The notes: a model not told the origin generated them from the letters alone. Shown: positions 1,317 through 61,770, numbered from the stretch's first letter. The stretch is 64,000 nucleotides of DNA from Malacoraja senta (GCA_038087875.1 CM075978.1:94488001-94552000); one strand, 5' to 3'. Program-made: numbers and translations.

Positions 1317-1380
1317 TTTTAAAGAGAGAGGTAAACCATTGAGGTCATACTCAATGTGTTAAAACAATGGTGTAGAGTAT

Positions 1381-1477
1381 TGAAGAAGGATCTTGACCCG
1401 AAATGTCACCCATTCCTTCTCTCCAGAGATGATGCCGGTACCGTTGAGTTACTCCATCATTTTGTGTCTATCTTCGA
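1381..1477 (+). mobile_element. Penelope-like terminal mini-insertion (degenerate hammerhead core)
   Basis: TGAAGAAGGATCTTGACCCGAAATGTC...TTTGTGTCTATC; TSD TGTAGAGTATTGA at 1371-1383 and 1478-1490. Confidence 0.8.
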
Positions 1478-1965
1478 TGTAGAGTATTGACATGAATTGA
1501 GAGCCAGTAAGAACATTTTGAATCTGGGTGACAGGAAAACAACTGATATCGGATCAGCCATTGTATATCTCCAAAAACTTTTCATTTCTATTCATTTCAA
1601 CAAGGTATTACAAATTGCATTCCCTTCACCAGAACAAATGATCTTATCTTAATGCATGCAAAATTGATTAAAAAGAGAAGAATGTATTACTGAATTATCC
1701 TTAATGTTCCAACATCTTTCTGCACTTAACGGTGCGTCTGATATTATGCTTTGAAGCTGGTCATTAAAGCAGAACTCTCAAGGCTCATTCATAGAACAAT
1801 GTGTGGGTAGATTTTTTGTCTTCACCACCCAGGTCGTGATCTGATGGAACAGATCCTACACCCATTATAGATTAGCAGTGGGCTATGAAGATTAAAATCC
1901 ACACCGTAATTTAATTCGCTACATCACGCTCTGAACAAAAATAAACGCAACCACCACTGGCAAGG

Positions 1966-2555
1966 AATCCAGACCATCACACAAACCAACCTCCCTTCCA
2001 TTGACTCAGTTTGCACCTCACGCTGCCTCCACAAGGCCACCGGCATAATCAAGGAGGAGTCGAACTCTGGCCGCTCCCTCTCTCCCCCTCTCCCATCAGG
2101 CAAGAGGTACTGAAGTGTGAAAACTCACACCTCCAGATTCAGGGACAGTTTCTTCACAGCTGTTATCAGGCAACTGAACCATCCTACCAACAACTAGAGA
2201 GCAGTCCTGAGCATCTGAGGAGAAAAAGAGAATATTTTCAGATGGATGATCATTCATCACAACGAGGCAATGAGTTAGATAGTAGCTCGGGACTGCTCTC
2301 TTACCAACCACTGGACAGCGGTCCTGAGCCACTATCTACCTCATTGGAGACCCTCGGATTATCTTTGATCGGACTTTGCTGGACTTTATCTTGCACCAAA
2401 CATTATTCATGTTATTCCCTTTATCACTGTGGATGGCTTGAGTGTAATCATGTATTGCTGGGTGTCCGCTGACTGGTTAGCATGTGCCAAAAGCTTTTCA
2501 CTGTACCTCAGTACGTGATGATTAACTAAACTCAAACGCAAACTAAACTCAAACT
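1966..2555 (+). mobile_element. Rex-Babar LINE 3' fragment
   Basis: Degenerate QTITQTNLPSID...LPSGKRY...SRFRDSFF C-terminus; (AAACT)n-type tail. Confidence 0.8.
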
Positions 2556-2592
2556 CTTGCATAGTTTTCTTTCTTCTGGAAATGTTATGTTT

Positions 2593-2975
2593 GTACTTTA
2601 AAAAAAATTGAGGTCAGGTAAGGGGGGATGCTAGTTGAAGAGTTGGTATGTCCCATTTACGTAATGCTCATAAAAATATTTGTTTCTCTCTTTTTCCTCT
2701 TTCTCTTTCTCTTTCTTTTCTAGGGTCTATTTCTTAACTCTTTTTCTTTTGTTTTTTAATTTTGCTCTTATAGGGTCTTCGTCCTTTTTTGTTGTCACAT
2801 TTTCTACACTTTCACTTTTTCCTTCACTTTCTTCTTTCTTTCAATCTTTTCTTTTTCTAGTGTAAAAAATAAATGGGGTACATTAATTGTAAGAAGACAT
2901 AAGTGACGAGTACTAATGTATGTGGTTGTAATGTAATGTACTTCTAATAAATTTTTTTTTTAAATTAAAAAAAAA
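2593..2975 (+). mobile_element. L1-type LINE 3' UTR
   Basis: T-rich 3' UTR ending TACTTCTAATAAA plus A tail like 47321-48125; 15-bp TSD GGAAATGTTATGTTT at 2578-2592 and 2976-2990. Confidence 0.8.
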
Positions 2976-3699
2976 GGAAATGTTATGTTTAATGTATGGA
3001 TGATTTTACATGTAATTTGTTTGTATGCGTCTACATGCGTGTTATGCCACTGCACGCAAGATATTTTGTTGTGCCTGTCACACACCGCACTTGTCCATAG
3101 GGCAATAGACTCAACTTGGCTTGGTTTACGATTCAAACCAGCCATGATCTGAATGAACAATGTAAAGAAAATAAATAATTAGGGAATATAAACTGCTCCA
3201 CAAACCAGGGACAGAACTCCGTGATAAAAGTGACTGAAGCCACAGAAAGATGCATCGTACTACCTGGGCACAGAATCCTTTTCTAAAGTTAAATAATCTC
3301 ACAGGAGTCAGGCTGTGGGAATGCAATGAGAAAGGAGATCAATTAAGAGCAAACAACTAACGCTGGCAAAGGAACACCTTCCCCCCCGCTCCATGGTGCA
3401 GGGGAAGGGTAATGTGAATAGAGAAGGGATCTGATTGCATAGGCTGACACTTCACATAAAAGGAAGCATTTCGGCTAAACGATAACCTCAGACTGCATTG
3501 CGGGAGCAGAGAATAGAACAGGACCAGAGATTGTCGACAATCTCCACCCAGCTTTGCACAATTAAAGTGCGTTGACAAAATTAGTACCAAGTAGCTTCAT
3601 TTAGAATGATTCCATGCTGAATAGATTAAAATATAATTCCCTGGTGACAATAAATTGGAAGGATTCCAAATGGAAGCAATGTTATCAAACATATTACTT

Positions 3700-3905
3700 A
3701 GAAAGACCCTCAAACTATCCTTGATTGGACTTTGCTGGCTTTAAACTAAACATTATTCCCTTATCATGTATCTTCTATGCACAGTAAATGGCTCGATTGT
3801 AATCATGGATTGTCTTTCTGCTGACTGGATAGCACGCAACAAAAGCTTTTCACCATTCCTCGGTACACGTGACAATAATAAACTAAACTAAACTAAACTG
3901 AACTA
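3700..3905 (+). mobile_element. Rex-Babar 3' UTR fragment
   Basis: Similar to 2345-2555 and 31575-31780; GTGACAATAATAAACTAAAC tail. Confidence 0.7.
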
Positions 3906-4004
3906 GTGAGGAAGCATTTACACAGGAATGTAAGAACAGGAAGGGCTGTTTAGCTCAAATACCTGTTTGGCTGTTCATTCTGATCATGGCTTGTTTGAAT
4001 CTTA

Positions 4005-4650
4005 AACCAAGCCAAATCGAGTCTATTGTCTTATAGACTAGTACCGTGAGCTACAGGTACAATGACAAATCTTACTTGCTGCAGCATTACAAGCACATAG
4101 ACATATACAAACACACAGAAACAAATTATATGTAAAATCATCCAGAAATTTAACACAACAATTCCAAAAGAACGAAGACTATGCAAAAAAGCAAAACGTC
4201 AGTGGCAAAACATAATTAACACAATAAAGCACGCCATGTTGATTGATGGTCATGGCGTCATGTTGAGCACAGACATTGTGGGCCGAAGGGCCTGTTTTTA
4301 CGCTGTACTGTTCTCTGTTCTATGTGAGTGCAAGAGGTGGACGGTGGTGTTCCGTTGACGAGGTAGGTATAGGGTTGAGCAGGTTAATTTAGAAACTTGC
4401 TAGTTGCAGAGAAGTACGTAACTGATCCTGAATCTGATGGTAGGGCACTGCAGCTTCTGTACCTCCTGCCCAATTTAGCAGTGAGAAGAGGGCATGACCC
4501 GGATGGTGGGGATCCTAGATAGAGGCCACCTTGAGATAGTGCCTCACATAGATGCTTTCCATGGAGAGGAGGGCTGTGCCCGTGATAGACCGTGCTGAGT
4601 CCACACTCTCTGTAGCCTCTTGTGTTGGAATTGCCATACCAGGCCATAGA
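4005..4650 (-). mobile_element. degraded Rex-Babar 3' fragment with an embedded CR1-type tail piece
   Basis: Minus-strand translation includes LGRRYRS; tail piece GTGGGCCGAAGGGCCTGTT near 4278-4322. Confidence 0.55.
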
Positions 4651-6054: not shown

Positions 6055-6552
6055 ACAAGAGACAAGACTGTTTCATTGTCATATGTCCCAAAATGGAACA
6101 ATTAAACTCTTACTTCCAGCCAGACAACAGATATGTAAACATAGTCTTCAGTAAAACTCATAGTAAACAACAACAACAAAATCAATGCAGGAATGAACTG
6201 CAGATGTTGGTTTAAACCGAAGATAGACACAAAAAGCTGGAGTAACTCAGCAGGTCAGGCAGAAATCTCTGGAGAAAAGGAATAGGTGACACTTTGGGCC
6301 GAGACCCTTCAGTATCTATGTAAAAAAAAACCCAGACAAATAAATAGACAATAACAGTGCAAAAATAATGTCCCAAAGTCTATATAGTTTGGAGCCTATT
6401 TTGAGGTTGCGTTCTTTACTAGCTTGATGGTCGTTGGGCAGAAACTGCTCCTGAACCTGGATCTTATAGTTTTCAGGCTCCTATACCTTCTTCTCGATGG
6501 CAGGAGTGAAATGAAAGCGTGGCCAGGGTGGTGTGGGTCTCTGATGATGCTG
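6055..6552 (-). mobile_element. Rex-Babar 3' fragment interrupted by a Penelope terminal fragment (~6186-6312)
   Basis: Similar to 60340-60690 in reverse; internal GAACTGCAGATG...GAGTAACTCAG block. Confidence 0.7.
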
Positions 6553-6818: not shown

Positions 6819-7042
6819 GGAGACACAAGGAACTGCAGATTCTGGTTTTACAAACTAAAACAAAGTGCTGGAGTAACTCCACAAGTCAGGCAGCATCTCT
6901 GGAGGACATGGATAGGTGATGTTTTGGGCCGGGACTTTTCATTCCGAAGAAGGGTAACAACCTAAAACGTCACCTATCCATGTTCTCCAGAGATGGTGCA
7001 TGACCCGCTGAGTTGCTCCACCACTTTGTGTCTTTCTTTGTT
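6819..7042. mobile_element. Penelope-like palindromic terminal insertion
   Basis: Inverted arms around CCGAAGAAGGG...AAACGTCA; approximate TSD TCACC(A/T)ACATG. Confidence 0.75.
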
Positions 7043-10563: not shown

Positions 10564-10752
10564 TGCAGCTAATTACATTTCCTGATTAGCAACTCAAATA
10601 TGAATGGTCGACCTCATTGTTGGATGCTCAGTCCGCCTGGACCTACCTGATCTCCCGGTTGCCAAACACTTTAATTCCCCTTTCCTTTTCCCTTTCCACT
10701 CACCTTTTCTGTCCTGGGCCTCCTCCACTGTCAGAGCGATGCCAAATGCAAA

Positions 10753-13029
10753 TTGGAGGAGCAGCACCTCATATTTCCTAACATGGACCTCCTGTTAGAA
10801 AATGAGACAGGGCAGGTGGCGGAGGTATGCGTCGGGGAGCACTTCGGGTCCAGTGATCACAATACCATTAGTTTCAATATAATTATGGAGAGGGTCAGAA
10901 CTGGACCTAGGGTTGAGATTTTTGTTTGGAGAAAGGCTAACTTTGAGGAGATGCGAAAGGATTTAAAAGGAGTGAATTGGGACATGTTGTTTTATGGGAA
11001 AGATGTAGAAGAAAAATGGAGGACATTTAAGGGTGAAATTTTAAGAGTACAGAATCTTTATGTCCCAGTTCGGTTGAAAGGAAATAGTAAAAAATGGAAA
11101 GAGCCATGGTTTTCAAGGGAAATTGGACACTTGGTTCGGAAAAAGAGAGAGATCTACAATAATTATAGGCAGCATGGAGTAAATGAGGTGCTTGAGGAGT
11201 ATAAAGAATGTAAAAAGAATATTAAGAAAGAAATTAGAAAAGCTAAAAGAAGGTATGAGGTTGCTTTGGCAAGTAAGGTGAAAGTAAATCCAAAGGGTTT
11301 CTACAGCTATATTAATAGCAAAAGGATAACAAGGAATAAAATCGGTCCATTAGAGAGTCAGAGTGGACAGCTATCTGCAGAGCCAAAAGAGATGGGGGAG
11401 ATATTGAACAATTTCTTTTCTTCGGTATTCACGAAGGAGAAGGATATGGAATTATGTGAGGTAAGGGAAACGAGCAGAGTAGCAATGGAAACTGTGAGAT
11501 TCAAAGAAGAGGAGGTGCGGACACTTTTGAAAAATATGAAAACGGATAAGTCTCCAGTTCCTGACAGGATATTCCCTAGGACATTGAGGGAAGTTAGTGT
11601 AGAAATAGCAGGGGCTATGACAGAAATATTTCAAATGTCATTAGAAACGGGAATAGTGCCGGAGGATTGGCGTACTGCGCATGTTGTTCCGTTGTTTAAA
11701 AAGGGTTCGAAGAGTAAACCTAGCAATTATAGATCTGTTAGTTTGACGTCAGTGGTGGGCAAATTAATGGAAAGGATACTTAAAGATAATATATATAAGC
11801 ATCTGGATAAGCAGGGTCTGATTAGGAACAGTCAACATGGATTTGTGCCTGGAAGGTCATGCTTGACTAATCTTCTTGAATTTTTCGAAGAGGTTACTAG
11901 GGAAATTGATGAGGGTAAAGCAGTGGATGTTGTCTATATGGACTTCAGTAAGGCCTTTGACAAGGTTCCTCATGGAAGGTTGGTTAAGAAGATTCAACTG
12001 TTGGGTATTAATGGTGGAGTAGCAAGATGGATTCAACAGTGGCTGAATGGGAGATGCCAGAGAGTAATGGTGGATGGCTGTTTGTCAGGTTGGAGGCCGG
12101 TGACTAGTGGGGTGCCTCAGGGGTCTGTGTTGGGTCCACTGTTGTTTGTCATGTACATCAATGATCTGGATGAAGGTGTGGAAAATTGGATTAGTAAGTA
12201 TGCAGATGATACTAAGATAGGTGGTGTTGTGGATAATGAAGTAGATTTTCAAAGTCTACAGAGAGATTTAGGCCATTTGGAAGAGTGGGCTGAAAGATGG
12301 CAGATGGAGTTTAATGCTGACAAATGTGAGGTGCTACATCTCGGCAGGACAAATCAAAATAGGACGTACACGGTAAATGGTAGCGAATTGAGGAATGCAG
12401 TTGAACAGAGGGATCTAGGAATAACTGTGCATAGTTCCCTGAAGGTGGAATCTCATGTAGATAGGGTGGTAAAGAAAGCTTTTGGTGTGCTGGCCTTTAT
12501 AAATCAGAGCATTGAATATAGAAGTTGGGATGTAATGTTAAAATTGTACAAGGCATTGGTGAGGCCAATTCTGGAGTATGGAGTACAATTTTGGTCGCCT
12601 AATTATGGGAAGGATGTCAACAAAATAGAGAGAGTACAGAGGAGATTTACTAGAATGTTGCCTGGGTTTCAGCAACTAAGTTACAGAGAAAGGTTGAACA
12701 AGTTAGGTCTTTATTCTTTGGAGCGCAGAATGTTAAGAGGGGACTTGATAGAGGTCTTTAAAATTATGAGTGGGTTAGACAGAGTGGACGTGGATAAGCT
12801 TTTCCCATTGAGAGTAGGGAAGATTCAAACAAGGGGACATGACTTGAGAATTAAGGGACAGAAGTTTAGGGGGAACTTCTTTACTCAGAGAGTGGTAGCT
12901 GTGTGGAATGAGCTTCCAGTGGAAGTGGTGGAGGCAGGTTCGATGTTATCCTTTAAAAATAGATTGGATGGGTATATGGACAGGAAAGGAATGGAGGGTT
13001 ATGGTCTGAGTGCAGGTAGATGGGACTAG
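10753..13029 (+). CDS. CR1 ORF2 fragment: end of APE endonuclease (SDH) plus complete reverse transcriptase; no native start
   Basis: 758 open codons with GSSDHN, NYRSVSLTS, QHGF, DFSKAFD, GVPQGSVLGPLLF, YADD, ERVQRRFTRM, TRGH motifs. Confidence 0.9.
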   Translation: MEEQHLIFPNMDLLLENETGQVAEVCVGEHFGSSDHNTISFNIIMERVRTGPRVEIFVWRKANFEEMRKDLKGVNWDMLFYGKDVEEKWRTFKGEILRVQNLYVPVRLKGNSKKWKEPWFSREIGHLVRKKREIYNNYRQHGVNEVLEEYKECKKNIKKEIRKAKRRYEVALASKVKVNPKGFYSYINSKRITRNKIGPLESQSGQLSAEPKEMGEILNNFFSSVFTKEKDMELCEVRETSRVAMETVRFKEEEVRTLLKNMKTDKSPVPDRIFPRTLREVSVEIAGAMTEIFQMSLETGIVPEDWRTAHVVPLFKKGSKSKPSNYRSVSLTSVVGKLMERILKDNIYKHLDKQGLIRNSQHGFVPGRSCLTNLLEFFEEVTREIDEGKAVDVVYMDFSKAFDKVPHGRLVKKIQLLGINGGVARWIQQWLNGRCQRVMVDGCLSGWRPVTSGVPQGSVLGPLLFVMYINDLDEGVENWISKYADDTKIGGVVDNEVDFQSLQRDLGHLEEWAERWQMEFNADKCEVLHLGRTNQNRTYTVNGSELRNAVEQRDLGITVHSSLKVESHVDRVVKKAFGVLAFINQSIEYRSWDVMLKLYKALVRPILEYGVQFWSPNYGKDVNKIERVQRRFTRMLPGFQQLSYRERLNKLGLYSLERRMLRGDLIEVFKIMSGLDRVDVDKLFPLRVGKIQTRGHDLRIKGQKFRGNFFTQRVVAVWNELPVEVVEAGSMLSFKNRLDGYMDRKGMEGYGLSAGRWD

Positions 13030-13154: not shown

Positions 13155-14226
13155 ATATTTCGCTTGGGCAGTTTACAACCCAGCGATATGAAAATTGCAT
13201 TTTCTAACTTCAAGTAACCCTATCTCTCCGACCCTCCCCCACCCAAGTTGGCATACTAGCTTCATAGTCAGCTTGTTGCGTCTCATTGTCTGTAACTCAT
13301 TCTCACCCAGGCCTCAGCTAAAAATGGCCTTTCTCCTTTATCATCGTTGCTATTTTGCATATCTTGCATTCATTTCTCTCTCTATATATCATTTCTCTCT
13401 CTCATTCTATATATCTCTCTATCACCTTCTATATCTCTCATTTCCCTTTCTCCTGACTCTCAGTCTGAAGAAGGGTCTCGATCCGAAACATCACCTATTC
13501 CTTTTCTCCAGATGCTGTCTGACCAGCTGAGTTACTCCAGCTTTTTGTGTCAATCTTCATATTAATAAATATATATTCATATTAATCTATCTTCAATATT
13601 AATATATTGTTTGGTGCATGCATGCATCATTTACATATTTTCTGCATCTGCTGATAAAAGTCCAAGGGAAAATGGCATGTCCGAATGTTACTTGATCATT
13701 GCGATGCTTCACTTCCTTGTTAACAGAGCAGAGCTTAATGTTTGTTAAACAAATATGCACACATTATATAGAGGGAGCTGTGTTGCATGACTGGAAGTAA
13801 AGAATTATCAGCTGAAATCAAAGTGCGTTGCTAAATCAATATAGTGTCATCTGTAGCTTCCATGAGTTGCTATGGGACAATCTTTTCTAGCACATTTAGA
13901 CTGGCCAAAAGAGAGCAGAAACCACTCCTCATATGCAGGCCCTCTCACAGATGAACTGAGGCCCAGGCCAATTTCAATTTTCGTAGCCCCCAAACCAAAA
14001 TCAAGCAGAGACCTCTCAATTTTAGAGACCCCCAAATCAAGATCCCTTTGAAGCAGACAGGCATGAGGCCCATGCCAAATGGCACTCATTGCCCTCCCCT
14101 CTGATAGGGCCTGCTCATACGTGTATGATACACACAAGTTTAAAAACTATTCTATTGCATATAGCCATGTGGTTCATGAATGTTTCTGTGAGGTGCTCAA
14201 CAACATTTACCACATAAATATAATAC

Positions 14227-18768: not shown

Positions 18769-18812
<44 letters not shown>

Positions 18813-20444: not shown

Positions 20445-21266
20445 TAAACTCTCTGTTTTTAAAGGTAAATGCCTTGAAGTTTATGGACCAGGTAGAATTT
20501 AATACAGCACAAATAATGTAGAAAGCAAGAAATCACTTACTACCAGGTAATATACAAAAAAATGTTCTTTGTCAGGGAGGGTGGTTATAATTTGAGAGGA
20601 AAGTTTAATTTTGTGTTCGTACAACTATGAAGAGTAGGGGGTTTCAATCTGAGGGGTGAAATTGTGGAATGATCTGGATGTGGAACTCAAGCAAAGCATA
20701 GGCATTACTAAGAAGAAGTGCAGACAAATATTTTCAAGAGGCATAAGAATGAGGAAGGGTTGTGATGATGGTTAAGTTTTAGTTTATTGCCACGGTGTGA
20801 TATTCGCATTGTACATAGAATTTGGATAATTGTTTATAAACTGTATATATGTCTGTTTGCGTGCGTGCATATGCATGTATATATGTCTGTATGTATGTAG
20901 TTTATGTANNNNNNNNNNNNNNNNNNNNNNNNNNNNNNNNNNNNNNNNNNNNNNNNNNNNNNNNNNNNNNNNNNNNNNNNNNNNNNNNNNNNNNNNNNNN
21001 NNNNNNNNNNNNNNNNNNNNNNNNNNNNNNNNNNNNNNNNNNNNGATGAGTAGCAGAAAAGGGGTAGGAATAAATAAGTGTACACTTCCTCCTACTCTTT
21101 TTCGAACATGTAAGATTTAATTTGTGATGTTTATGAGAAGTTATTTAATGAGTTATGTATAGGTTTATCGTTCATTTCATTTTATTGTTATTTTGCTTTG
21201 TTTTTAACTTATTTTGTTTTACCTGTTCGAAATATAATATATACTACTACTACTACTACTACTACT
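20445..21266 (+). mobile_element. L2/Crack-type LINE 3' fragment spanning a gap
   Basis: NSLFLK..ALKFMD.VEF.TAQIM*KARN.LLPGNIQK..F.REGGYNLRGKFNF; 3' stem-loop GGGGTAGGA..AATAAG..TCCTACTC; (TAC)n tail. Confidence 0.7.
20909..21044. other. assembly gap
   Basis: N run. Confidence 1.
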
Positions 21267-31783: not shown

Positions 31784-32070
31784 AGAAGATAGACACAAAT
31801 TGCTGGAGTAACTCAGTGGGACAGGCAGCATCTCTGGAGAGAAGGAATGGGTGACGTTTCGGGTCAACCAAAACATCACCCATTCTTTCTCTCCAGAGAT
31901 GCTGCCTGTCCCACTGAGTTACTCCAGCATTTTGTGTCTATCTTCAATGTAGAGTATAGACGTATTGAGAGCCAGTAAGGACATTTTGATTCTGGGTGAT
32001 AGCAACAACTGATATCGGATCAGCCATTGTATATTCGGTTTAAACCAGTATCTGCAGCTCATTTCTACAA
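31784..32070. mobile_element. Penelope palindromic fragment carrying an 87-bp copy of 1478-1568
   Basis: Direct sequence comparison (see findings). Confidence 0.8.
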
Positions 32071-35966: not shown

Positions 35967-36581
35967 TTGGGTCAATGTGGTTTTGGAAGGTTGTGAGGTT
36001 GTGAAAGATGCTGTACGAGACTTTTCCTAACGGCAGTTCCTATTACAGCGGCCAGTAATTGGATGGAGGATACTGGACGCTGCACATTCAAACCAAGAGG
36101 TCATAAAATGGCTGCTATTTCTGCGTTACGACCACATAATGTCACATGTGTCAGTGATAGAGGAAAGCTTTTCCTTCTGTGCTCTTCTAAAATAATATCA
36201 CCATAATTAGGTGAAACTTTGAAAGCTTCAAAGCCTGAAAAGATATAAAATTAAAATATGAGCGGCTAGATCACATCTGCACCAAATAAACAAATAGATT
36301 GGGAGCAGGTTATTGCCATAAACCTGTTGAGAGTTCCTGCTCTCATCCCTCAAAAGGAAAGCTGACTGCACATAATTGTTTATTAAAACTCCCAAAGGGG
36401 CCTTTTGGGGAGCTTTTATAATGGCAGTCTTCATGCCTAGCTGAGCCAAGACCCACCATGGGGGGTGATCAGTCGGGGACTGAGAAGAAGATGCAAGAAG
36501 ACTCATGCTCATTGCCTTCTTGAAGATGTACAACATCTACACTGATCCTTGCAAATCTCCAGCCCGTGACCATTCAACAAT

Positions 36582-36928
36582 TCATAAGAGCAGAATTAGG
36601 CCATTCGGCCCATCAAGTCTACTCCGCCATGCAATCATGGCTAATCTATCTCTCCCTCTCAACCCCATTCTACTGCCTTCTCCCCATAGCCCTTCCACCC
36701 GTACTAATCTAGAATCTATCTACCTCAGCCTTAAAAATATCCATTGACTTGGCCTCCACAGCCTTCTGTGGCAATGAATTCCACAGATTCACCACCGTCT
36801 GGCTAAATAAATTACTCATCATCTGCTTTCTAAAGGAACGTCCTTTTATTCTGAGGCTATGACCTCTAGTCCTAGACTCTCCCACGAGTGGAAACATCCT
36901 CTCCATATCCACTCTATCCAAGCCTATT
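36582..36928 (-). mobile_element. CR1/HER1 3' fragment
   Basis: DRVDMERMFPLVGESRTRGHSLRIKG...VVNLWNSLPQKAVEA. Confidence 0.9.
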
Positions 36929-37324
36929 CAAGGTGCTGAAGAAGCATTCAGGATGATATTGAGAGCCTGTGTCCTTCAATGAGGACCACATAGAAGCCCT
37001 GCATAAGCAGTGAGACGAGGGCACCATCTCACGAGTTGCCCACATTGCCTCCTCCATCACCCCAGAAGCCTCAGAACTAGAGTGGAAGCAAGGACATAGT
37101 TTTAAAGTGAAGGGGCAACGTTTACAGGATATGTGGTGGGTGCCTGGAACATGCACCCTGTGGTGGTGGTGGCAGCAGATACGATAGCGGTGTTAAAGAG
37201 GCTTTTAGTTTGGCACATAAATATGCAGGAAATGGAGGGACATGGATCATGTGCAAGCAAATGAGGCGATCTTGGCATTATGTTCAACACAGACTGTGGG
37301 TGGAAAGGTCTGTTCCTGTGCGGT

Positions 37325-46668: not shown

Positions 46669-46933
46669 CTCTGGAGAACATGGATAGGTGATGTTTCAGA
46701 ATGATACACTTCTTCAGTCTAAAGAAGGGTCTCGACCTGAAACGTCACCTATCCATGTTCTCCAGAGATGCTGCCTGACCTGCTGAGTTACTCCAGCGCT
46801 TTGTGTTATTTTGAGGCAAAATATTGACTGGTTCAGCGTAACCAGGCGAACATCCTTCACTTGTCGCAGTTTCCTGTGGAGTCGTGGAGTCATAAACCAC
46901 AGAAACAAGACCTTCAGCTCACCGTTCCATGTT

Positions 46934-49520: not shown

Positions 49521-49615
49521 GGTACACAAAAATGCTGGAGAAACTCAGCGGATGCAGCAGCATCTATGGAGCGAAGGAAACAGGCAACGTTTCGGGCCGA
49601 AACCCTTCTTCAGAC
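49521..49615 (-). mobile_element. Penelope mini-insertion with an intact hammerhead core (49586-49613), inside an older Penelope copy
   Basis: CUGAAGA-A-GGGU(UUCG)GCCC-GAAAC-GUU; 15-bp TSD TTTCCAGATATGGTG. Confidence 0.85.
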
Positions 49616-50032
49616 TTTCCAGATATGGTGCCTGACCCGCTGAGTTACTCCAGCACGTTTTAGGCAGTACTCTATGTTTCTCTCAAGATTCCAGCATCTG
49701 CAGTTTATCGTGTCTCCATCTCTTCAATCAAGCAGGGCACACAAAAGATTACCACATCATCTTGTTCCTCTTCAAATCACACATCATCCTGGCTTAGAAT
49801 TATGTTGCCATCGCTTTGTCATCACTGGACATAAATCCTGAAACCTCAATTTCACAGCAGTGCAGATAAACCATAAAGCCATAAGACATCGGTGCAGATT
49901 TAGGCCATTCAGTCCATCAAGGCTACTCTGCCATTTAGTCGTGGCTGATCTATTTTTCCCTCTCAACCCCATTCTCCTGCCTTCTCCTGTAACCTTTGAG
50001 GCCCTTACTAATCAAGAACCTATTGATCTGAA

Positions 50033-50635
50033 GGGCGGCATGGTGGAGCAGCGGTAGAGTTGTTGCCTTACAATACCAGAGACCGGAGTTCAATCCTGAC
50101 CACGGGTGTTATGTTTATCATGGAGTTTGTATGTTCTCCCTCTGACCGTGTGGGTTTTCTCCGAGCGCTCCGTTTTCCTCCCACACTCCAAAGACGTACA
50201 GGTTTGTAGGTTAATTGGCTCGGTAAAAATTGTGAATTGTCCTTGGCATGTAGTATAGTGCTAGTGTACAAGGTGATCTCTGGTCGGCGTGGACTCGGTG
50301 AGCCGACAATAGACAATAGACAATACACAATAGGTGCAGGAGTAGGCGATTCGGCCCTTCGAGCCAGCACCGCCATTCAATGTGATCATGGCTGATCATC
50401 CCCAATCAGTACCCCGTTCCTGCCTTCTCCCCATATCCCCTGACTCCGCTATTTTTAAGAGCCCTATCTAGCTCTCTCTTGAAAGCATCCAGAGAACCTG
50501 CCTCCACCGCCCTCTGAGGCAGAGAATTCCACAGACTCACCACTCTCTGTGAGAAAAAGTGTTTCCTCGTCTCCGTTCTAAATGGCAAGCTGAAGGACCT
50601 GTTTCCGCACTGTATCAATAAACTACACTAAACTA
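50033..50635 (+). mobile_element. HE1-type V-SINE interrupted by a CR1 3' end (-, ~50307-50588)
   Basis: SINE tail resumes at ~50589; CR1 RTETRKHFFSQRVVSLWNSLP. Confidence 0.85.
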
Positions 50636-53335: not shown

Positions 53336-54480
53336 TATAAAGTCTGAAGAACACAGTGGCATATCAGACAGCAACTGTGGAAAGAGAAACAGAGGTAACA
53401 TTTCAGGTTGAAGAGGATTTGCAAGAACAGGTAGAGCAATGCGTTAGATTTAAGTCGCAGACCTGGAATAGGAGGGATGGCTTGGTCACAAGGTCACAAG
53501 ATTTGTTGTGGTGGTAAGTTTTTGTTGACGCCATCTGGCTGATAGGGAAATGAAAGTTAGGAGAGAGAACACAAATAAAGAATATGTAAAAAGTGTAAAA
53601 TACAGAGCTGTGGGAATTACCCAGCAGATCAAGTGGTGTGAGTGGAGACAGAAAAAAGGATTCAATCTTACAGTGAGATAACCTGCAATAGTTTAGTTTA
53701 ATTTGGAGATACAGCACGGAAACCTCAACCTCGGCCTGTAGCTCGGAGCCTCTATTCCTGGCAGCATCATCATAAATCCCTGTAAACGTATCTCTGAAGT
53801 CTAAAGCCTTCAGGAAGAGGCTGTCATTATCCAATTTGGCCTACATGTGATTCCAGACACAAGACAGTGGATTGATTGTTGAACGTCCTATGAAAGGGGT
53901 CCAGCAGGCCAACGGGAACAATGAGGGGAGAGGATGAAACACCAGCCTCACACCCCGAAAAATCAATGAAACAGAACAAATCTTCGGCGAATCCACAGCC
54001 TTTTTTGCCCACATTTCCCCTCCCATGCTGAGCTTCATCACAGGAACAGCCAGCCTTCCAGCATCAAGTCCCTGATGTCAGCTTCCAGATTTCCGCTTCT
54101 GTGTGCCCTGGAGCCAAATTTGCCATCAGTAACATCTGGGGATGCTGACAATGCTGTTACTTTTACCGGCAATCCCCTGAACATCTGGGCCACATTGTCA
54201 TTCCAGCAAAGGATTCAGTTTATAGACCCTAGCCTGAATTCCCACCCTGCTGAAATATGGTCCTGCACATTGTTCTATATGTGACCAGATCCACATTTTA
54301 AGAGCCAGTTCTGCAATTCCATTCCCAAACAAGACATTATCTGGAATATAATTATGAGTACATTGGATGATAAATTAAACCTGCAAATTAACTTTCTGGA
54401 GTAGGAAAATGAAATTACAATAATAATGATAGATAGAATCTTTTCCTCAGGACAAATGAGTCTAGAACTACTGAGCACTG

Positions 54481-56191: not shown

Positions 56192-57927
56192 CAACTTTAC
56201 CAACTTTACAAATAACCAACGTTAGTTGTTTTTCTGCTTTCCTTCAAAGATTATAGATATCTAGCATTAACCTTCTTACATCTGTTGGTACATAATCATC
56301 ATGCGTTAACATGCTAACAAATCTGCTAACAAATCTGTCTCTCTGATCTGTTATGTTTTCAATTAGTGTATATGCTGCCATGCAACTTTCATTGCAATCA
56401 ATTTCCATCCTTTAAGAAAGTCCTAGAAGTCATTGTTAGCATGTCAGTGATGTGATCTCACCAGACTACAGTCATAATTCATGGACTGTATCTTATTCTG
56501 AATTATATTGGAATCAATAAAATAACGAGTTCCAGGGGCTAAATTAGCTGGTTCTGGAACACGAGCACTGGTTTTGCAATATGCAATTAAACTGAATGCA
56601 TTTGACCCAGCGCAGAATGCACACAAAACGTGTTCTGTGGTCATTAACACATTTCAGCTGCCAACTGATGCTAACCACACTATAGTTGGCTTTAACTCAT
56701 AGCCACCAGACTCACTTCCCTGAGCAGCCAGGACCAGTTCATGGATTTGTAGAAATTTGCAGCACATCGTGTCCATGCCAAACAAGCACAAGAACTATTA
56801 AGCTGCTTCCACATCCTAGCTCTCTGCCCATAGTCTTGTACTGTAGGTCATCAAGTTCAACCATTCGACTAAGTTCTTGCTGGACGCCTCAAGTATTTAT
56901 CCCTTTACCACAATGGGTCAGGCAGCATCTCTGGAGAAAAATTATATTTTTCTATGTTCTTTCATTCATTGTTGGCATGTAGAGCCTGAACCATATTTAT
57001 GCCTGGCGGAAGAAAAAGAGTCAGATAGTCAAAAAGCACAGAAACAGGTCCTTCAGCCCACCATGTTCATGCATCTATCCACCCAGAAATCTCCTTTACC
57101 TGGGTGGTTTGCAATTCACAAAAGAAATTGCAAGATTTAAATGTCTTTATGTGAAAGATGAAGGAGAACCCCTTTAGTTCAATAAATCTAAAGAGCTTAA
57201 TACTTCTTCCCTTTCTGTATTTTTTTTTATTTGAACTGCTTCAATGACAAGTGCAGATGACATCATTGTAGGAGTGGCTTACTGACCTGAACTGAATTAG
57301 CTTCAGCAATGAAAATAATTAACCCAGAATGTTTTCCTAACAACTTTATTCCGGCCATGTTCGTATATTTAGCCCTCTTGCTGCTGGAGTGAGAGGCTTT
57401 GCCAAGTAACTTCCCAAGAGATGGCATCTCAATTTTAGTTTCGGCAAAAATATCCAAACAAAATGTGCAGGATCCAAGCTCTTTGATTCCTGAAGGAAAT
57501 GTTTTGGATTGGAAATGTGGAGCTAATTATGCAGTGTTCCTTTGATGAACTCATTATTACATGACACAACATGTGCAGCATTCACTTCCAGAATTATGGG
57601 GACAATGTGTCAAGACTCAAGAGTCAAGAGTCAATAATGTTTTATTGTCAAATTTCCCAGATAGAACAATGAAATTCCTACTTGCAGCAGCACAACAGAA
57701 TATTTAAACATAGTACACAGTAAACAACATAATAATCGAGAAAAAACATGGGGTCCCATGTTCACACGGGACAGCTGGTCCCCCAACGCAATATTCCACG
57801 TCTCCACCAATTCCAATATTGGTGGCCTGTGGGGAGGGAGCTTTTTGGAGCGCTAGTATGGGTGTTCTGGGCCGTATGGACTGGTTTCCAGAGGGCTAGT
57901 ATGGACATTGTGGGCCGAATGGATTCT

Positions 57928-58093
57928 TGGGATGGCAGATCAGTCACTCAGGCCTAGTGGGCTGGCAGCTCAATCACTCAGGTCCAGTGGGCTGGCAGCT
58001 CAGTCACTCAGGCCTGGTGGGCTGGCAGCTCAGTCACTCAGGCCTGGTGGGCTGGCAGCTCAGTCACTCAGGCCTGATGGGCTGGCAGCTCAG
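57928..58093. repeat. 30-bp tandem repeat TGGGCTGGCAGCTCAGTCACTCAGGCCTGG, ~5.5 copies
   Basis: Read directly. Confidence 0.9.
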
Positions 58094-58521
58094 AAACTGC
58101 CAGAAATTCAGCCCAAAACAGGTGAGAGACTCTGAGAGAGAAGGAGGAGAGGGTGGGTAATCCATTTTAGAAATTTTTCATCTTTTTCTGCAGATCACAG
58201 CAATGAAGGCGGAAAGTCTATCCTGGCCTGGATCTCACAGGGAGCCAATGAAGAGAGGGAGAAAAATACTGGGGTGAGGTTTAATACTTGCAGGGGGAAT
58301 ACTTACTGTTGGGCCGAAGGGACTCCTCCTGGGCTAGTACAGGCCTGATGGGCCCAAGGGGCTCTTTTTAAATAAATCTCAGTGAAAGGCACTTTTTCTG
58401 GACTTTTCCTCGCCCAGCATGGGCCTTTTGGGCCAAAATGCTCCTCCTGGGCTAATACGGGCATTTGGGGCAAGGGACTGGTTTCTAGGCTAATAGGGGC
58501 CTTGTGGGCCGAAATTAGTGG

Positions 58522-59121
58522 TTTCAGGCAGGCCAAACAACTCATTTTATTTCCATTGCCTTTGCAGTTTCAAACACAGGGCAGGCCAAACAGCTCATTG
58601 CATTTTCATTTCATTTCCATTGCCATTGCAGTTTCAAGCACAGGGCAGGCCAAACAGCTCATTGCGTTTTCATTTCATTTCCATTGCCATTGCTGTTTCA
58701 AGCACAGGGCAGGCTAAACAGCTCATTGCATTTTCATTTCATTTACATTGCCATTGCAGTTTCAAGCACAGGGCAGGCCAAACAGCTCATTGCATTTTCA
58801 TTTCATTTCCATTGCCATTGCTGTTTCAAGCACAGGGCAGGCTAAACAGCTCATTGCATTTTCATTTCATTTACATTGCCATTGCAATTTCAAGCACAGG
58901 GCAGGCCGAACAGCTCACTGCATTTTCATTTCATTTCCATTGCCATTGCTGTTTCAAGCACAGGGCAGGCCAAACAGCTCATTGCATTTTCATTTCATTT
59001 CCATTGCCATTGCTGTTTCAAGCACAGGGCAGGCTAAACAGCTCATTGCATTTTCATTTCATTTACATTGCCATTGCAGTTTCAAGCACAGGGCAGGCCA
59101 AACAACTCATTTCATTTTCAT
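58522..59121. repeat. 64-bp tandem repeat, ~9 copies
   Basis: CAGGGCAGG recurs at 58641, 58705, 58769... Confidence 0.95.
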
Positions 59122-59619
59122 TAATGGCTAACAAATCATTTATCGCAAGTACATTGCAGACTTACAGTTCAGTTGATTCACAGCTTAGAATGACAGTTGT
59201 GGCCTCTCCCTCACGATCTTGCACAGTGACTGACTCACGTCCAGGCATCTGGGGTTTTATAGGCCTGCCCCCCCCCTAGAAGGGGCGCTACCTTCATCGT
59301 GGTGATTGACAGGCGAGAGGACCAATAAGCTGATCTCAAGGCAGTTGGGGAAGGGGTGTGTGGGGGAGGGGGAACCTTCAAAACCTTCATAACATTTGTA
59401 CTATTTCACCGATCAGAACAAAGCTTATTTGACTCACAGCAGAGGAGAATGGTGAGTAAGGTGACGAAAAATCGTAGCGCTATGGGGGATAGTTTTTGAG
59501 CAAATTTAATTACAATGCAGACAGGAAGTGGTCAAGATGAGAGTATTAGTAATAGTATACATAGATATATATACAGTATACACACACACACTGAACTTTT
59601 TTTCGTGTTTATCACTGTT

Positions 59620-59745
59620 AATGTCTCCACAATCTATAAAGCCACCTAGTGTGCAGTCCATCTGGTCCAGGTGATGTATCCATCTTCAGCCCTTTCAGCT
59701 TCCCAAGCACCTTTTCCCTAGTAATGGTGACTCCACTAAATACAG
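59620..59745 (-). mobile_element. CR1 ORF2 internal fragment
   Basis: ITREKVLGKLKGLKMDTSPGPDGLH. Confidence 0.8.
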
Positions 59746-59943
59746 NNNNNNNNNNNNNNNNNNNNNNNNNNNNNNNNNNNNNNNNNNNNNNNNNNNNNNN
59801 NNNNNNNNNNNNNNNNNNNNNNNNNNNNNNNNNNNNNNNNNNNNNNNNNNNNNNNNNNNNNNNNNNNNNNNNNNNNNNNNNNNNNNNNNNNNNNNNNNNN
59901 NNNNNNNNNNNNNNNNNNNNNNNNNNNNNNNNNNNNNNNNNNN
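59746..59943. other. assembly gap
   Basis: N run. Confidence 1.
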
Positions 59944-59964
59944 ATAGTTCAGAGCTTATTGGAG

Positions 59965-60691
59965 GTTGTAATGTCCCACTTATATCAACGGGTCGATGGT
60001 GGAAAGGGTCAAGAGCTTGAAATTCCTGGGCGTGCATATTTCCGAAGATCTCTCCTGGTCCCAGAACACTGATGCAATTATAAAGAAAGCACATCAGCAC
60101 CTCTACTTCCTGAGAAGATTACAGAGAGTCGGTATGTCAAGGAGGACTCTCTCGAACTTCTACAGATGCACAGTGGAGAGCATGCTGACGGTTGCATCGT
60201 GGCTTGGTTCGGCAACTTGTGCGCCCAGGAGCAGAAAAGACTACAAAAGTTGTGACCACTGCCCAGTCCATCATCGGCTCTGACCTCCCTACTATCGAGG
60301 GGATCTATCGCAGTCGCTGCCTCAAAAAGGCTGCCAGCATCATCAAGAACCCACACCATCCTGGCCACACACTCATCTCTCCGCTGCCTTCAGGTAGAAG
60401 GTACAGGAGCCTAAAATCTGCAACATCCAGGTTCAGGAACAGCTTCTACCCCACAGCCATCAGATTATTAAACTCAACTCAAACAAAAATCTGAACTTTA
60501 ATAGCCTATTGCACTTTATCTGCTTATTTATGTGTGTATACAGTATATATACATATTCAATGGTATATTGACACACTGATCTGTTCTGTATTTATTTATG
60601 CCTACAATATTCTGTTGTGCTGAAGCAAAGCAAGAATTTCATTGTCCTATCTGGGACACATGATAATAAACTCTCTTGAATCTTGAATCTT
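59965..60691 (+). mobile_element. Rex-Babar LINE 3' fragment (frameshifted ORF C-terminus)
   Basis: VERVKSLKFLGVHISEDLSW..KKAHQHLYFLRRL..FYRCTVES..LPSGRRYRS..SRFRNSFYPTAIRLLN; (TCTTGAA)n tail. Confidence 0.9.
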
Positions 60692-60856
60692 AATGGCCTG
60701 ATGGTTGCAGGGAAGATGCTGTTCCTGAACCCGGACGTTACAGTTTTCAGGCTCCTGTACCTTCTTCCCAATGGCAAGGATGAAATGAGTGTGTGGCCAG
60801 GGTGGTGTGGGTCTCTGATGATGCTGGCTGCCTTTCCGAGGCAGCGACTCCTGTAA
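60690..60856 (-). mobile_element. Rex-Babar fragment, opposite orientation
   Basis: LGRRYRSLKTVTSGFRNSIFPATIR on minus strand. Confidence 0.8.
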
Positions 60857-61175
60857 ATTCATAAGTATGTGAAGCCCAAAACTAAAACCAGTGACAAGAA
60901 ATTCTTCCAGAAAGCGTGGAAGCATCAAACACAGCATTTTTAATGCAGACCAATATTTTGTGCATTCTGCAATTTAAAATGTTTTAATCCATTCTTGGGG
61001 TTTGGCTATCGTGCAAGGCTACCATTTATCGCTCACACTTAATTGCCATAGTTAAAGGGTTTTTAATACTCTTCCCTGTGGCTTCCACTTATAGAACAAA
61101 TAGAAAGGGCCAGATTACACTCGTGGGTAGTTGAAGGTTCTATGTAGAGTTACAGTAACAGCTCGCCATAATTTA

Positions 61176-61770
61176 CAGATCATAAGATCATAACTTCATA
61201 AGTGATAGGAACAGAATTATGCCATTCGGCCCATCAAGTCCATTCAATCTCTCCCTCCTAACCCCATTCTCCTGCCTTCTCCCCATAATGCCTGACACCC
61301 ATACTAATCAAGAATCTATCTATCTCTGCCTTAAATATATCCATTCACTTGGCCTTCACAGCAAAGGGGTCTTTTGGGGAGCTTTCATAATGCCAGTCAT
61401 CATGCCTAGCTGAGCAATGGGAGGGGTTAGGTGACAACCGAGAAGAAGACTCAAGCAGACTCATGGTCTTAGCCTTCTTGAAGATGTACAACATCTACAC
61501 TGATTCTTGGCAATCTCTAGCCTGTGACCATGTACAAGCTCATAAGTGAATGGAGCAGAATTAGGCTTTTCAGGCCAATCAAGTCTACTCCGCCATTCAA
61601 TCATTATTGATCTATCTCTCCCTCTCAACCCCATTCTCCTGCCTTCTCCCCATAACCCCTGCCACCCATACTAATCAAGAATCTATCTTTCTCTGCCTTA
61701 AATATATCCACTGAGTTGGCCTCCATAGCCGTCTGTAGCAAAGAATTCCACAGAATCACCACCCTCTGAC
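61176..61770 (-). mobile_element. two CR1 3' ends separated by a copy of 36393-36580
   Basis: CR1 tails at 61176-61361 and 61540-61770. Confidence 0.8.

What the first reader, a model, noticed from the sequence alone, without database searches (positions are those of the whole stretch)
1371..61770. Recurrent repeat-primed local flank copying as a possible general process
Inference from several separate observations (1478 to 31948, 3972 to 2556 inverted, 36393 to 61362, possibly 2213). Each moves ~90-220 bp including a repeat/flank junction over 1-30 kb, with no poly(A) or TSD of its own. In the two clearest cases the copy lands inside a homologous repeat. Three events with both donor and acceptor in 64 kb suggest proximity-biased, repeat-guided templated insertion could be a common way this genome duplicates small unique pieces, and repeat masking would hide it.
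Basis: inference. Interest (0 to 1): 0.7.

Follow-up and report, generated by a model that had tools for sequence, protein, structure and literature searches.

The report
Repeat flanks copied into sister repeats
Two short stretches lying just past the end of a jumping-gene copy were copied 25-30 kb away into another copy of the same jumping-gene family, most likely as break-repair scars, a kind of small local duplication already described in other vertebrates.

Summary
The sequence matches are real, but only two of the four cited events have the claimed anatomy.

- **Pair 1.** A 91-bp 3' flank of a short retroposon ("R") at 1478-1568 recurs at 31948-32034. There it sits inside a long-form R, exactly where the donor R ends. 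The donor R carries a perfect 13-bp target duplication, which fixes the direction of copying.
- **Pair 3.** About 180 bp of 3' flank of a CR1-like LINE end (36393-36576), plus that LINE end, recurs at 61362-61770. It abuts a truncated same-family LINE end.
- **Pair 2.** This is a plain 215-bp inverted pair with no shared junction.
- **"2213".** This is a self-templated local scar.

The best reading (about 0.55) is break repair that copied from a nearby same-family repeat, with homology at one junction and end-joining at the other.

The main rival is RNA-level 3' transduction with template switching.

The "general process" claim is therefore untested. First readers of this scan noted similar events on other pieces of this genome.

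The parts
1371..1383 (+). Left copy of the 13-bp target-site duplication TGTAGAGTATTGA of the donor R insertion
   Evidence: Read directly. It is the longest flanking direct repeat among all 47 R hits. An exact repeat of 13 bp or more occurs in 1.2% of random intervals, mostly in microsatellites.
1384..1477 (+). Donor R: short-form retroposon copy (consensus positions 11-105, plus GA)
   Evidence: 90% identical to the R consensus built from alignment A1. It ends at the canonical short-form end TATCTTC.
1478..1568 (+). F1: native 3' flank of the donor R, beginning with the right copy of the 13-bp duplication (1478-1490)
   Evidence: Its only other copy in the window is 31948-32034. Homology stops at 1568/32034.
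31785..31865 (-). R': inverted arm of a head-to-head R dimer. Its outer end is joined to the (AAACT)n tail of a LINE 3' end (about 31315-31784)
   Evidence: 93-95% complementary to 31868-31945. Sequence read.
31868..31947 (+). R_right: R arm (consensus 28-105, plus AA) immediately upstream of the inserted flank copy
   Evidence: It is 87% identical to the donor R, which is no more than family-level similarity.
31948..32034 (+). F2: 87-bp copy of F1, including the donor's duplication sequence (TGTAGAGTATAGA), inserted in a long-form R
   Evidence: 88.5% identical to 1482-1568. Alignment A1. Flagged as an 85-bp single-copy insert in an interrupted repeat.
32035..32069 (+). E: the resumed 3' extension of long-form R (consensus 104-138). 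It overlaps the left part by TC, or by 8 bp read as TCAATGTA / TCGGTTTA
   Evidence: Matches the 3' extension of 8-9 other R copies. Alignment A1.
36393..36576 (-). P (donor copy): 3' flank of a CR1-like LINE 3' end, contiguous with unique DNA upstream on the + strand
   Evidence: Its only other copy in the window is 61362-61533. 35960-36400 has no other match.
36577..36935 (-). S (donor): 3' end of a CR1-like LINE on the minus strand, with the tail repeats (CTTATGA-like) at the 36577 end
   Evidence: The reverse strand encodes the ...QRVVNLWNSLP... C-terminus seen in the window's LINE ORFs. RT domain found in the 758-aa ORF. Alignment A2.
61188..61361 (-). S#1: truncated same-family LINE 3' end (S positions 1-179) that abuts the copied flank. 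It belongs to the CCTAACC subtype
   Evidence: The junction ...CACAG|CAAAGGGG has 1 nt of overlap.
61362..61533 (-). P copy (acceptor)
   Evidence: 80% identical to 36393-36569 over 165 aligned sites.
61534..61770 (-). S#2: LINE 3' end (S positions 1-230) following the P copy. It has the same P/S junction as the donor and the TCTCAACC subtype, like the donor
3972..4189 (+). X(+): one arm of a roughly 215-bp inverted pair (pair 2)
2554..3159 (-). X(-): the other arm, split by a later 383-bp poly(A) retro-insert (2593-2975) with a 15-bp target duplication GGAAATGTTATGTTT. Its outer end lies 0-5 bp from a LINE tail
2213..2329 (+). '2213': extra ~117 bp in a LINE 3' end. 2303-2329 repeats 2186-2212 (22 of 27 positions). 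2268-2300 is an inverted copy of 2314-2346
   Evidence: Alignment A3. BLAST.
20909..21044 (.). Assembly gap between donor and acceptor of pair 1
   Evidence: No continuity is detectable across it.
59746..59943 (.). Assembly gap between donor and acceptor of pair 3
   Evidence: ORFs show LINE pieces on opposite strands on the two sides.

Best explanation
Pairs 1 and 3 are scars of double-strand-break repair by templated synthesis. This is synthesis-dependent strand annealing, or one-sided invasion finished by end-joining. It equals the 'repair-mediated duplication' of Pace et al.

**How it works.**
- A break occurred inside a retroelement copy: a long-form R at about 31945, and a CR1-like LINE 3' end at about 61361.
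- A nearby, then-young copy of the same family served as template.
- That template copy ends where its own insertion ended.
- The new strand was then joined to the other break end with only 1-2 nt of overlap.
- The result is repeat, foreign flank, repeat resumed.

**What is shown and what is inferred.**
- Shown: the anatomy, the direction of pair 1 (from the donor's target duplication), the in-register position, the absence of poly(A), and that each flank has exactly one other copy in the window.
- Inferred: that a break was the start, that the template was DNA and not RNA, and that a LINE endonuclease cut at R's palindromic GGTTTAAACC site caused the break in pair 1. The other arm of the same R dimer carries a LINE insertion at that very site.

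Pair 2 and 2213 are other, ordinary local rearrangement scars.
For: **Pair 1.**
- The donor R is bracketed by a perfect 13-bp direct repeat. F therefore starts with the donor's own target duplication, and that sequence is carried into the acceptor.
- At the acceptor, F sits between R consensus position 105 and R consensus position 104 onward. The repeat is interrupted exactly where donor homology ends. The resumed 35 bp match 8-9 other R copies.

**Pair 3.**
- The P/S junction is the same in both copies.
- The copy abuts a same-orientation, truncated S (positions 1-179), while S#2 runs on to position 230. This is what a single resident S split by P plus S(1-179) would give.
- S#1 is of a different subtype from the donor and from S#2.

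**Both pairs.**
- No poly(A), and only 1-2 nt of junction overlap.
- Donor and acceptor lie 25-30 kb apart on the scaffold. For a low-copy sequence this is essentially impossible if donors were drawn genome-wide.

**Window-wide scan.**
- A scan for interrupted repeats found five low-copy inserts.
- Two are plainly transposon insertions, with a target duplication plus microsatellite tail or with terminal inverted repeats.
- Of the three non-transposon inserts, two have their donor in the window.

**Precedent.**
- Pace et al. report 824 such events in human: inserts of 50 bp or more in TEs, mean 162 bp, no poly(A), junction microhomology of 2-9 nt. They also find them in zebrafish and chicken.
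- Copying of non-homologous sequence from ectopic sites, and one-sided invasion, are established experimentally. The references are listed in PMC4888836.
Against: - Genome-wide copy number of F and P could not be measured. The window holds about 23 other two-copy pairs that are simply mid-repetitive families.
- Both copied pieces are 3' flanks in the elements' own orientation, as in RNA 3' transduction. Each is followed by a piece carrying the element's canonical 3' end, which would make the composite competent for retrotransposition.
- Each donor tract stops shortly before a terminator-like motif. A T4 run lies 11 nt beyond 1568. TTTTAATAAA begins 5 nt beyond the LINE-strand end of P. This was noticed post hoc.
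- The distances of 25-30 kb fall outside the under-5-kb class that Pace et al. could confidently assign to repair.
- The repeat parts carry no diagnostic sites. Donor S, S#2 and S#1 are all about 87% alike, and P is only 80%.
- An alternative parsing of locus 2 exists: resident R = 31195-31278 plus 32035-32069, with a 752-bp composite insert.
- Linkage across the two gaps is unverified.
Confidence: 0.55

Rival explanations
1. RNA-level origin. A read-through transcript of the parent element (R at 1384-1477; the LINE end at 36577-36935) carried its 3' flank. During target-primed reverse transcription of a normal same-family RNA, the reverse transcriptase switched onto this read-through RNA, or the cDNA recombined with a resident copy. 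This gives element + flank + second 3' end of the element.
For: - Both copied pieces are the immediate 3' flank of a retroelement in its own orientation. For pair 1 the parent's target duplication is included.
- Both copies are followed by a piece with the canonical 3' end of the family.
- Terminator-like motifs lie 5-14 nt beyond the ends of both donor tracts.
- R copies often occur as head-to-head dimers with variable centres, a sign of template acrobatics at insertion.
- A first-reader note elsewhere in this genome reports an apparent CR1 3' transduction (untested).
Against: - RNA has no reason to land 25-30 kb from its source. Two such cases in one window would be astronomically unlikely unless F and P are high-copy.
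- Pair 1 needs the switch to fall within 2 nt of the register in which the two R pieces complement each other.
- The copies stop before, not after, the terminator motifs, and carry no tail.
Confidence: 0.25
2. The 'flanks' are internal parts of multi-copy composite repeat subfamilies (R with an 89-bp insert; LINE end-P-LINE end). These spread by ordinary retrotransposition. The two copies in the window are then unrelated members that co-occur by chance.
For: - R is extremely abundant: 47 hits and 4.1 kb in 64 kb. A subfamily making up 2-3% of R copies would give about one copy per window.
- The window has about 23 two-copy pairs that are mid-repetitive families.
- Copy number was untestable.
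Against: - Locus 1 has the left copy of the 13-bp duplication upstream of R, so it is the founding site and not an offspring. Having the unique founder and an offspring in one window by chance is very unlikely.
- Locus 3a lacks the downstream LINE end that a composite member would carry.
Confidence: 0.12
3. Remnants of an ancient 25-30 kb segmental (tandem) duplication, otherwise erased by decay and transposon turnover.
For: - Both pairs are direct and have similar offsets (30.5 and 25.0 kb).
- LINE copies at 1969-2553 and 31315-31784 lie near pair 1.
Against: - In both acceptors the copied piece is bounded on both sides by parts of a same-family repeat, not by decayed collinear sequence.
- Around pair 1 the order of R-F and the LINE is swapped between the loci, and the LINE copies are no closer to each other than to other copies.
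- No other collinear matches appear at these offsets.
Confidence: 0.04

Closest known systems
[quoted passage not shown]
   Same: - An insert of 50 bp or more interrupts a transposable element relative to its consensus.
- The insert has one other copy, on the same chromosome.
- There is no poly(A), and junction overlap is short.
- Sizes match: their mean is 162 bp, against 87-91 bp and about 350 bp here.
- They attribute the events to SDSA.
   Different: - Their confident class has donors under 5 kb away, and 66% under 3 kb. Here the distances are 25 and 30.5 kb.
- They report only 2-9 nt of microhomology and do not examine whether the donor abuts a same-family TE. Here one junction lies in 80-180 bp of repeat homology, in register.
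- No cartilaginous fish was surveyed.
- Their uniqueness filter could not be applied here.
One-sided invasion / coupled homologous and end-joining repair, and copying of non-homologous DNA from ectopic templates. Sources: Belmaaza & Chartrand 1994; Nassif et al. 1994; Tremblay, Jasin & Chartrand 2000 for breaks in LINEs. All are cited in PMC4888836 and PMC7407515. Their details are given from my own knowledge
   Same: - Homology at one end starts synthesis on an ectopic repeat copy.
- Synthesis continues into non-homologous flank.
- The event is closed without homology.
   Different: Those are induced breaks in experimental systems. Here there are only fixed germline footprints, 12-20% diverged, and the break itself is inferred.
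LINE/SINE 3' transduction (known for L1 and SVA; from my own knowledge)
   Same: The parent's immediate 3' flank travels with the 3' part of the element. In pair 1 this includes the parent's target duplication.
   Different: - There is no poly(A) or new tail after the flank. A second 3' end of the element follows instead.
- No target duplication of the offspring was found.
- The parent is only 25-30 kb away.
Replicative template switching (FoSTeS/MMBIR; reviewed in PMC4888836)
   Same: Templated segments come from nearby DNA, there is microhomology at one junction, and return to the original template by homology is possible.
   Different: It usually produces larger or complex copy-number changes. 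Nothing here distinguishes it from SDSA.
Short local 'doublets' (Thomas et al. 2004, as discussed in PMC2671141)
   Same: Short, low-copy paired duplications lie near each other, in direct or inverted orientation. Pair 2 would fit.
   Different: Doublets were defined as near-identical and under 100 bp. Pair 2 is 215 bp and 76% identical.

Membership tests
Repair-mediated duplication (Pace et al. 2009) | An insert of 50 bp or more interrupts a TE copy relative to the family consensus | tested here: met
   F2 (87 bp) lies between R consensus 105 and 104-138. P plus S(1-179) lies between S#1 (1-179) and the rest of S#2.
Repair-mediated duplication (Pace et al. 2009) | The insert is not itself a transposon, retrogene or LINE transduction | tested here: inconclusive
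   There is no poly(A), no terminal inverted repeats and no other window copies. But both inserts are 3' flanks of retroelements, so a transduction-type origin is not excluded.
Repair-mediated duplication (Pace et al. 2009) | The insert is found at exactly one other place in the genome | not testable with these tools
   There is exactly one other copy in the 64-kb window. The scan index and the protein collection were uninformative.
Repair-mediated duplication (Pace et al. 2009) | The donor is closely linked (under 5 kb for their confident class) | tested here: not met
   The distances are 30.5 kb and 25.0 kb, each across an assembly gap. The events fall in their 'over 5 kb, same chromosome' class.
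Repair-mediated duplication (Pace et al. 2009) | Breakpoints show microhomology, filler, deletion or short duplication, and no poly(A)/T | tested here: met
   There is 1-2 nt of overlap at 32034/32035 and at 61361/61362. An 8-bp R overlap flanks F2. There is no A/T tract.
LINE/SINE 3' transduction | The transduced DNA is the immediate 3' flank of a parent element | tested here: met
   F1 follows R's canonical 3' end plus GA and begins with the parent's target duplication. P follows the LINE tail on the LINE strand.
LINE/SINE 3' transduction | The offspring ends in a new tail and is bracketed by its own target duplication at an unrelated site | tested here: not met
   No tail follows F2 or the P copy, and no flanking duplication of the composite was found. 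Both sit in same-family repeats.
Segmental duplication | At least 1 kb of collinear homology (conventionally 90% or more) | tested here: not met
   171 bp at 88% and 418 bp at 82%. Nothing collinear lies around them.
Ordinary ectopic gene conversion between dispersed repeats | Both ends of the converted tract lie in homology, and no foreign sequence is added | tested here: not met
   One junction is non-homologous and a foreign flank is inserted.

The most novel reading that the evidence does not exclude
In this slowly evolving cartilaginous-fish genome, young retroposon copies routinely served as homology anchors for break repair over tens of kilobases. The breaks may have been made by LINE endonuclease at sites such as R's GGTTTAAACC.

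Whenever the chosen template copy was truncated, its private flank was captured. Visible flank captures would then be the tip of pervasive, otherwise invisible, repeat-to-repeat conversion.

They would occur at a density far above the 0.6 per Mb of TE DNA reported for human. This window has 2 in about 27 kb of repeats.
Probability: 0.12. Interest if true: 0.55.

Novelty: new member of a known kind. Interest (0 to 1): 0.3.

Why it matters
If the DNA-repair reading holds, these are clean, direction-resolved examples of repair-mediated duplication in a lineage where it has not been described. They carry one twist: a dispersed repeat supplies the homology that selects a template 25-30 kb away.

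This would matter in three ways:
- It gives a visible read-out of repeat-to-repeat recombination.
- It is a source of small duplications of unique DNA that repeat masking hides.
- It hints at a link to LINE endonuclease activity.

As it stands, this is two old events in one window, explained by a known process, with an RNA-based rival not excluded.

Tried and rejected

The first call only showed that coded runs hold the 1200-4400 region.
- The search of earlier findings by sequence was blank for P and for F. It was also blank for a high-copy control, S, so the blank says nothing.
- Exact look-up of four window ORFs, including one across P, found none in the protein collection. I therefore dropped the idea of using ORF homologues as a copy-number proxy and spent no large protein search on it.
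- Searching R sequence words in papers gave no hit. PMC85044 (Tremblay 2000) is not held.

**Analyses that did not discriminate.**
- Diagnostic-site analysis of the S parts gave one site shared by donor and S#2, and one shared by S#2 and S#1. It is uninformative.
- Identities among the R parts do not decide whether R_right was resident or copied.
- A search for target duplications around all R copies found that only locus 1 has a long one. The other copies are too decayed.
- Sequence continuity across both gaps: none detectable.

**Rejected candidate events.**
- 6056-6166 / 57625-57735 / 60606-60691 and 41035-41084 / 53364-53413 are small multi-copy families.
- 34976-35171 and 45312-45819 are transposon insertions.
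- 20122-20253 / 47996-48128 are 3' ends of a poly(A) LINE family.

**A reading I revised.** I first took R as a minus-strand element. I reversed this after seeing the canonical short (about 105) and long (about 140) ends and the head-to-head dimers with variable centres.

Full report
**Setting**

The window is repeat-rich vertebrate DNA. 42% of it has at least one other copy inside the window. A follow-up note on another piece of this genome calls it a skate; I did not verify the species.

The main repeat families met here are these:
- A roughly 320-bp tRNA-derived SINE.
- A LINE 3' end with an (AAACT)n tail. Copies lie at 1969-2553, about 31315-31784, 48710-48975 (minus strand) and 3704-3904.
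- "S", which is the reverse strand of the 3' end of a CR1-like LINE. Its reverse strand encodes the ...QRVVNLWNSLP... C-terminus found in the window's LINE ORFs. The 758-aa ORF at 10753-13029 has a reverse-transcriptase domain.
- "R", a retroposon of about 100-140 bp with 47 hits in the window.

R has a sharp 5' end and two canonical 3' ends. The short form ends near consensus position 100-105 (TGTGTCTATCTTC). The long form runs to about 140, adding GGTTTAAACCAGCATCTGCAGTTCC... R often occurs as head-to-head dimers whose centres differ from dimer to dimer.

The gap at 20909-21044 lies between donor and acceptor of pair 1. The gap at 59746-59943 lies between those of pair 3.

The flanks show no element continuing across either gap. 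At the second gap, LINE pieces lie on opposite strands on the two sides.

Continuity, distance and even linkage therefore rest on the scaffold alone.

**Pair 1**

1398-1568 matches 31868-32034 at 87.7% over 171 bp. Beyond the repeat, 1482-1568 matches only 31952-32034, at 88.5%.

At locus 1 the R copy (consensus 11-105, plus GA) is bracketed by a perfect 13-bp direct repeat, TGTAGAGTATTGA, at 1371-1383 and 1478-1490.
- This is the only long flanking repeat among all R copies.
- Repeats of 13 bp or more occur in 1.2% of random intervals, nearly all in microsatellites.
- I read it as the target-site duplication of this R insertion.
- The flank F (1478-1568) is therefore native to locus 1. It begins with the duplication, and locus 1 is the source.

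At locus 2 the same 13-mer (one mismatch) and the rest of F follow an R arm ending at the same consensus position (...TATCTTC AA). Directly after F (32034) the R family resumes with TCGGTTTAAACCAGTATCTGCAG... (32035-32069). This matches the long-form extension of 8-9 other copies.

So an 87-bp copy of locus 1's flank sits inside a long-form R, exactly where the short-form donor R ends. There are 2-8 bp of duplicated R sequence and 1-2 nt of overlap at the far junction, and no poly(A).

**Complications at locus 2**

- The R arm is half of a head-to-head dimer (31785-31865 / 31868-31945, 93-95% complementary).
- The outer end of the other arm is joined to the tail of a LINE 3' end, at or next to the same palindromic GGTTTAAACC site.
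- A further short-form R lies at 31195-31278. The scan for interrupted repeats therefore also allows a second parsing: resident R = 31195-31278 plus 32035-32069, with a 752-bp composite insert.
- Identities among the R parts (79-95%) do not decide between the two parsings. In either, the flank copy abuts the resumed R tail.

**Pair 3**

36393-36801 matches 61362-61768 at 81.8% over 418 bp. About 12-19 other S copies all begin near 36584. 36393-36576 (P) has no other copy in the window.

The P/S junction is the same in both loci. At the donor, P runs on into unique DNA.

At the acceptor, P is preceded without a spacer by another S copy. This copy, S#1, is in the same orientation and is cut at S position 179 (...CACAG|CAAAGGGG, 1 nt of overlap). 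The S after P (S#2) runs on to position 230.

This is what one resident S (1-230) would look like after P plus S(1-179) had been copied into it from the donor. S#1 is of a different subtype (CCTAACC) from the donor and S#2 (TCTCAACC).

The S parts are otherwise uninformative. All three pairwise identities are about 87%, and P is 80%. This only says that the event is about as old as the repeats themselves.

On the LINE's own strand, P is the 3' flank of the LINE tail.

**Pair 2 and 2213**

- **Pair 2.** 3972-4189 and the reverse complement of 2554-2592 plus 2976-3159 are a real inverted pair of about 215 bp at 76-78% identity. One arm was later split by a 383-bp poly(A) retro-insert with a 15-bp target duplication. 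One arm touches a LINE tail and the other lies 68 bp from another copy's tail. No junction is shared. With several hundred repeat ends in the window, such adjacency is not significant. It may be a local inverted duplication or two members of a low-copy family.
- **2213.** About 117 extra bp sit in one LINE copy. They contain a 27-bp imperfect direct duplication of the adjoining LINE sequence and a 33-bp inverted copy of the sequence just downstream. There is no distant donor. This is a self-templated repair or replication scar of another kind.

**How special are the two good cases?**

Two-copy segments are common here: 46 segments, or about 23 pairs. Several are simply small families. A second copy in the window is therefore weak evidence by itself.

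What is specific is the junction anatomy. I scanned the window for repeat copies interrupted relative to other copies.
- Apart from nested known repeats, there were five low-copy inserts.
- 34976-35171 is a retro-insert with a 9-bp target duplication and an (ATTC)n tail.
- 45312-45819 is a transposon with long terminal inverted repeats.
- The remaining three are acceptor 1, acceptor 3b and 2213.
- So two of the three non-transposon inserts in repeats have their donor inside the window.

**Mechanism**

My preferred reading (about 0.55) runs as follows:
1. A break occurred in a repeat copy.
2. One end entered, or the finished strand re-annealed through, a nearby young copy of the same family.
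3. Synthesis ran past that copy's natural end into its private flank.
4. The far end was closed by end-joining.

For pair 1 the break may have been a LINE-endonuclease cut at GGTTTAAACC. The partner arm carries a LINE insertion there, and the 8-bp overlap looks like a staggered cut. This step is inferred.

The reading explains the register in pair 1, the adjacency and orientation in pair 3, the lack of tails, and the proximity.

**Main rival**

The main rival (about 0.25) is RNA-based. Both pieces are 3' flanks in the element's own orientation, as in 3' transduction. Each is followed by a piece with the family's canonical 3' end, as expected if reverse transcription began on a normal RNA and then switched to a read-through RNA.
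- In favour: terminator-like motifs lie just beyond both donor tracts. A T4 run lies 11 nt after 1568. TTTTAATAAA lies 5-14 nt after the LINE-strand end of P. I noticed this post hoc.
- Against: RNA gives no reason for proximity. It would therefore need F and P to be high-copy, and it would need the founding locus 1 to share a window with an offspring by luck.

Composite high-copy subfamilies (about 0.12) and an eroded segmental duplication (about 0.04) fit worse.

**Comparison with the literature**

Pace et al. 2009 (PMC2671141) searched for TEs interrupted by 50 bp or more of DNA that occurs at one other place.
- They found 1,136 cases in human. 824 had the donor within 5 kb. The mean length was 162 bp. 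There was no poly(A), and junctions showed microhomology, filler or deletion.
- They attributed these to SDSA.
- They also found them in nine other vertebrates, including zebrafish and chicken.
- They linked them to the earlier 'doublets' and noted a correlation with LINE activity.

What differs here is the 25-30 kb distance and the use of a same-family repeat, in register, at one junction. That paper does not examine either point. One-sided invasion and copying of non-homologous DNA from ectopic templates are long established experimentally (references listed in PMC4888836 and PMC7407515; details from my own knowledge).

I therefore file this as a new member of a known kind. Two membership features remain open or unmet: uniqueness could not be tested, and the donor is not within 5 kb.

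**Other notes of this scan**

First readers have recorded similar things on other pieces of this genome:
- a 442-bp segment copied 35 kb into a MITE;
- a SINE-mediated inverted template switch copying 314 bp of flank over about 6 kb;
- a 73-nt two-donor patch, which a follow-up judged an ordinary repair scar;
- an apparent CR1 3' transduction.

These are unchecked leads. They suggest the class recurs in this genome, but they do not establish a rate.

**Verdict**

- The process is already known.

Noticed in passing
window 10753-13029 (with 10647-10777 / 13173-13512 versus 33306-33431 / 33434-33754): An open 758-aa LINE ORF with a reverse-transcriptase domain lies inside a roughly 2.4-kb insert. 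The insert splits one copy of a two-copy repeat. The other copy, at 33306-33754, is uninterrupted and looks like the empty site.
   Followed up: partly
window 2593-2975: A 383-bp retro-insert with an AATAAA signal, an A-rich end and a 15-bp target duplication GGAAATGTTATGTTT (2578-2592 and 2976-2990). Its 3' end resembles those at 20122-20253 and 47996-48128, which are 94% alike. All three belong to a poly(A) LINE family.
   Followed up: partly
window 34976-35171: A SINE copy is split by a ~190-bp single-copy insert. The insert has a 9-bp target duplication ATGTGGGTT, an AATAAA signal and an (ATTC)6 tail. It is a retro-copy made by a LINE that uses a microsatellite tail.
   Followed up: partly
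window 45312-45819: A GC-rich 508-bp element with terminal inverted repeats of about 45 bp (GGGCCTGTCCCACGAGCA...) is inserted in an R copy at GAGTTA/CTCC. It looks like a Harbinger-type MITE.
   Followed up: no
window 6827-7038, 42713-42916, 46666-46806, 47040-47189, 49524-49655, 31785-31951: R elements repeatedly occur as head-to-head inverted dimers. The centres fall at different consensus positions (2-49), near R's own small hairpin GGGTCTCGACCC. This suggests snap-back synthesis at insertion and not a single palindromic master copy.
   Followed up: partly
window 31781-31790 and 31940-32040: Both arms of the R dimer at locus 2 are disrupted at or next to the same palindromic GGTTTAAACC site. 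One arm is disrupted by a LINE tail and the other by the copied flank. This may be a recurrent endonuclease target.
   Followed up: partly
window 17125-18800 versus 57753-59573: Two copies of a roughly 2-kb unit lie 40.6-41.7 kb apart (72-84% identity). Each contains a minisatellite, but with different periods: 31 bp at 17803-18512 and 64 bp at 58478-59186.
   Followed up: no
window 46934-47320 versus 48126-48512: A 387-bp direct duplication at 98.7% identity brackets an 805-bp insert. I saw it in the self-comparison but did not analyse it.
   Followed up: no
window 29817-30057 versus 50314-50554: A 241-bp inverted pair at 94% identity, 20 kb apart. It is much younger than most repeats here and belongs to an S-like family with other copies at 43438-43669 and 25767-25940.
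   Followed up: no
window 59996-60280: A LINE C-terminal ORF matches Pfam ALKBH8_N (E 7e-12). The family model seems to pick up a LINE-derived segment here.
   Followed up: no
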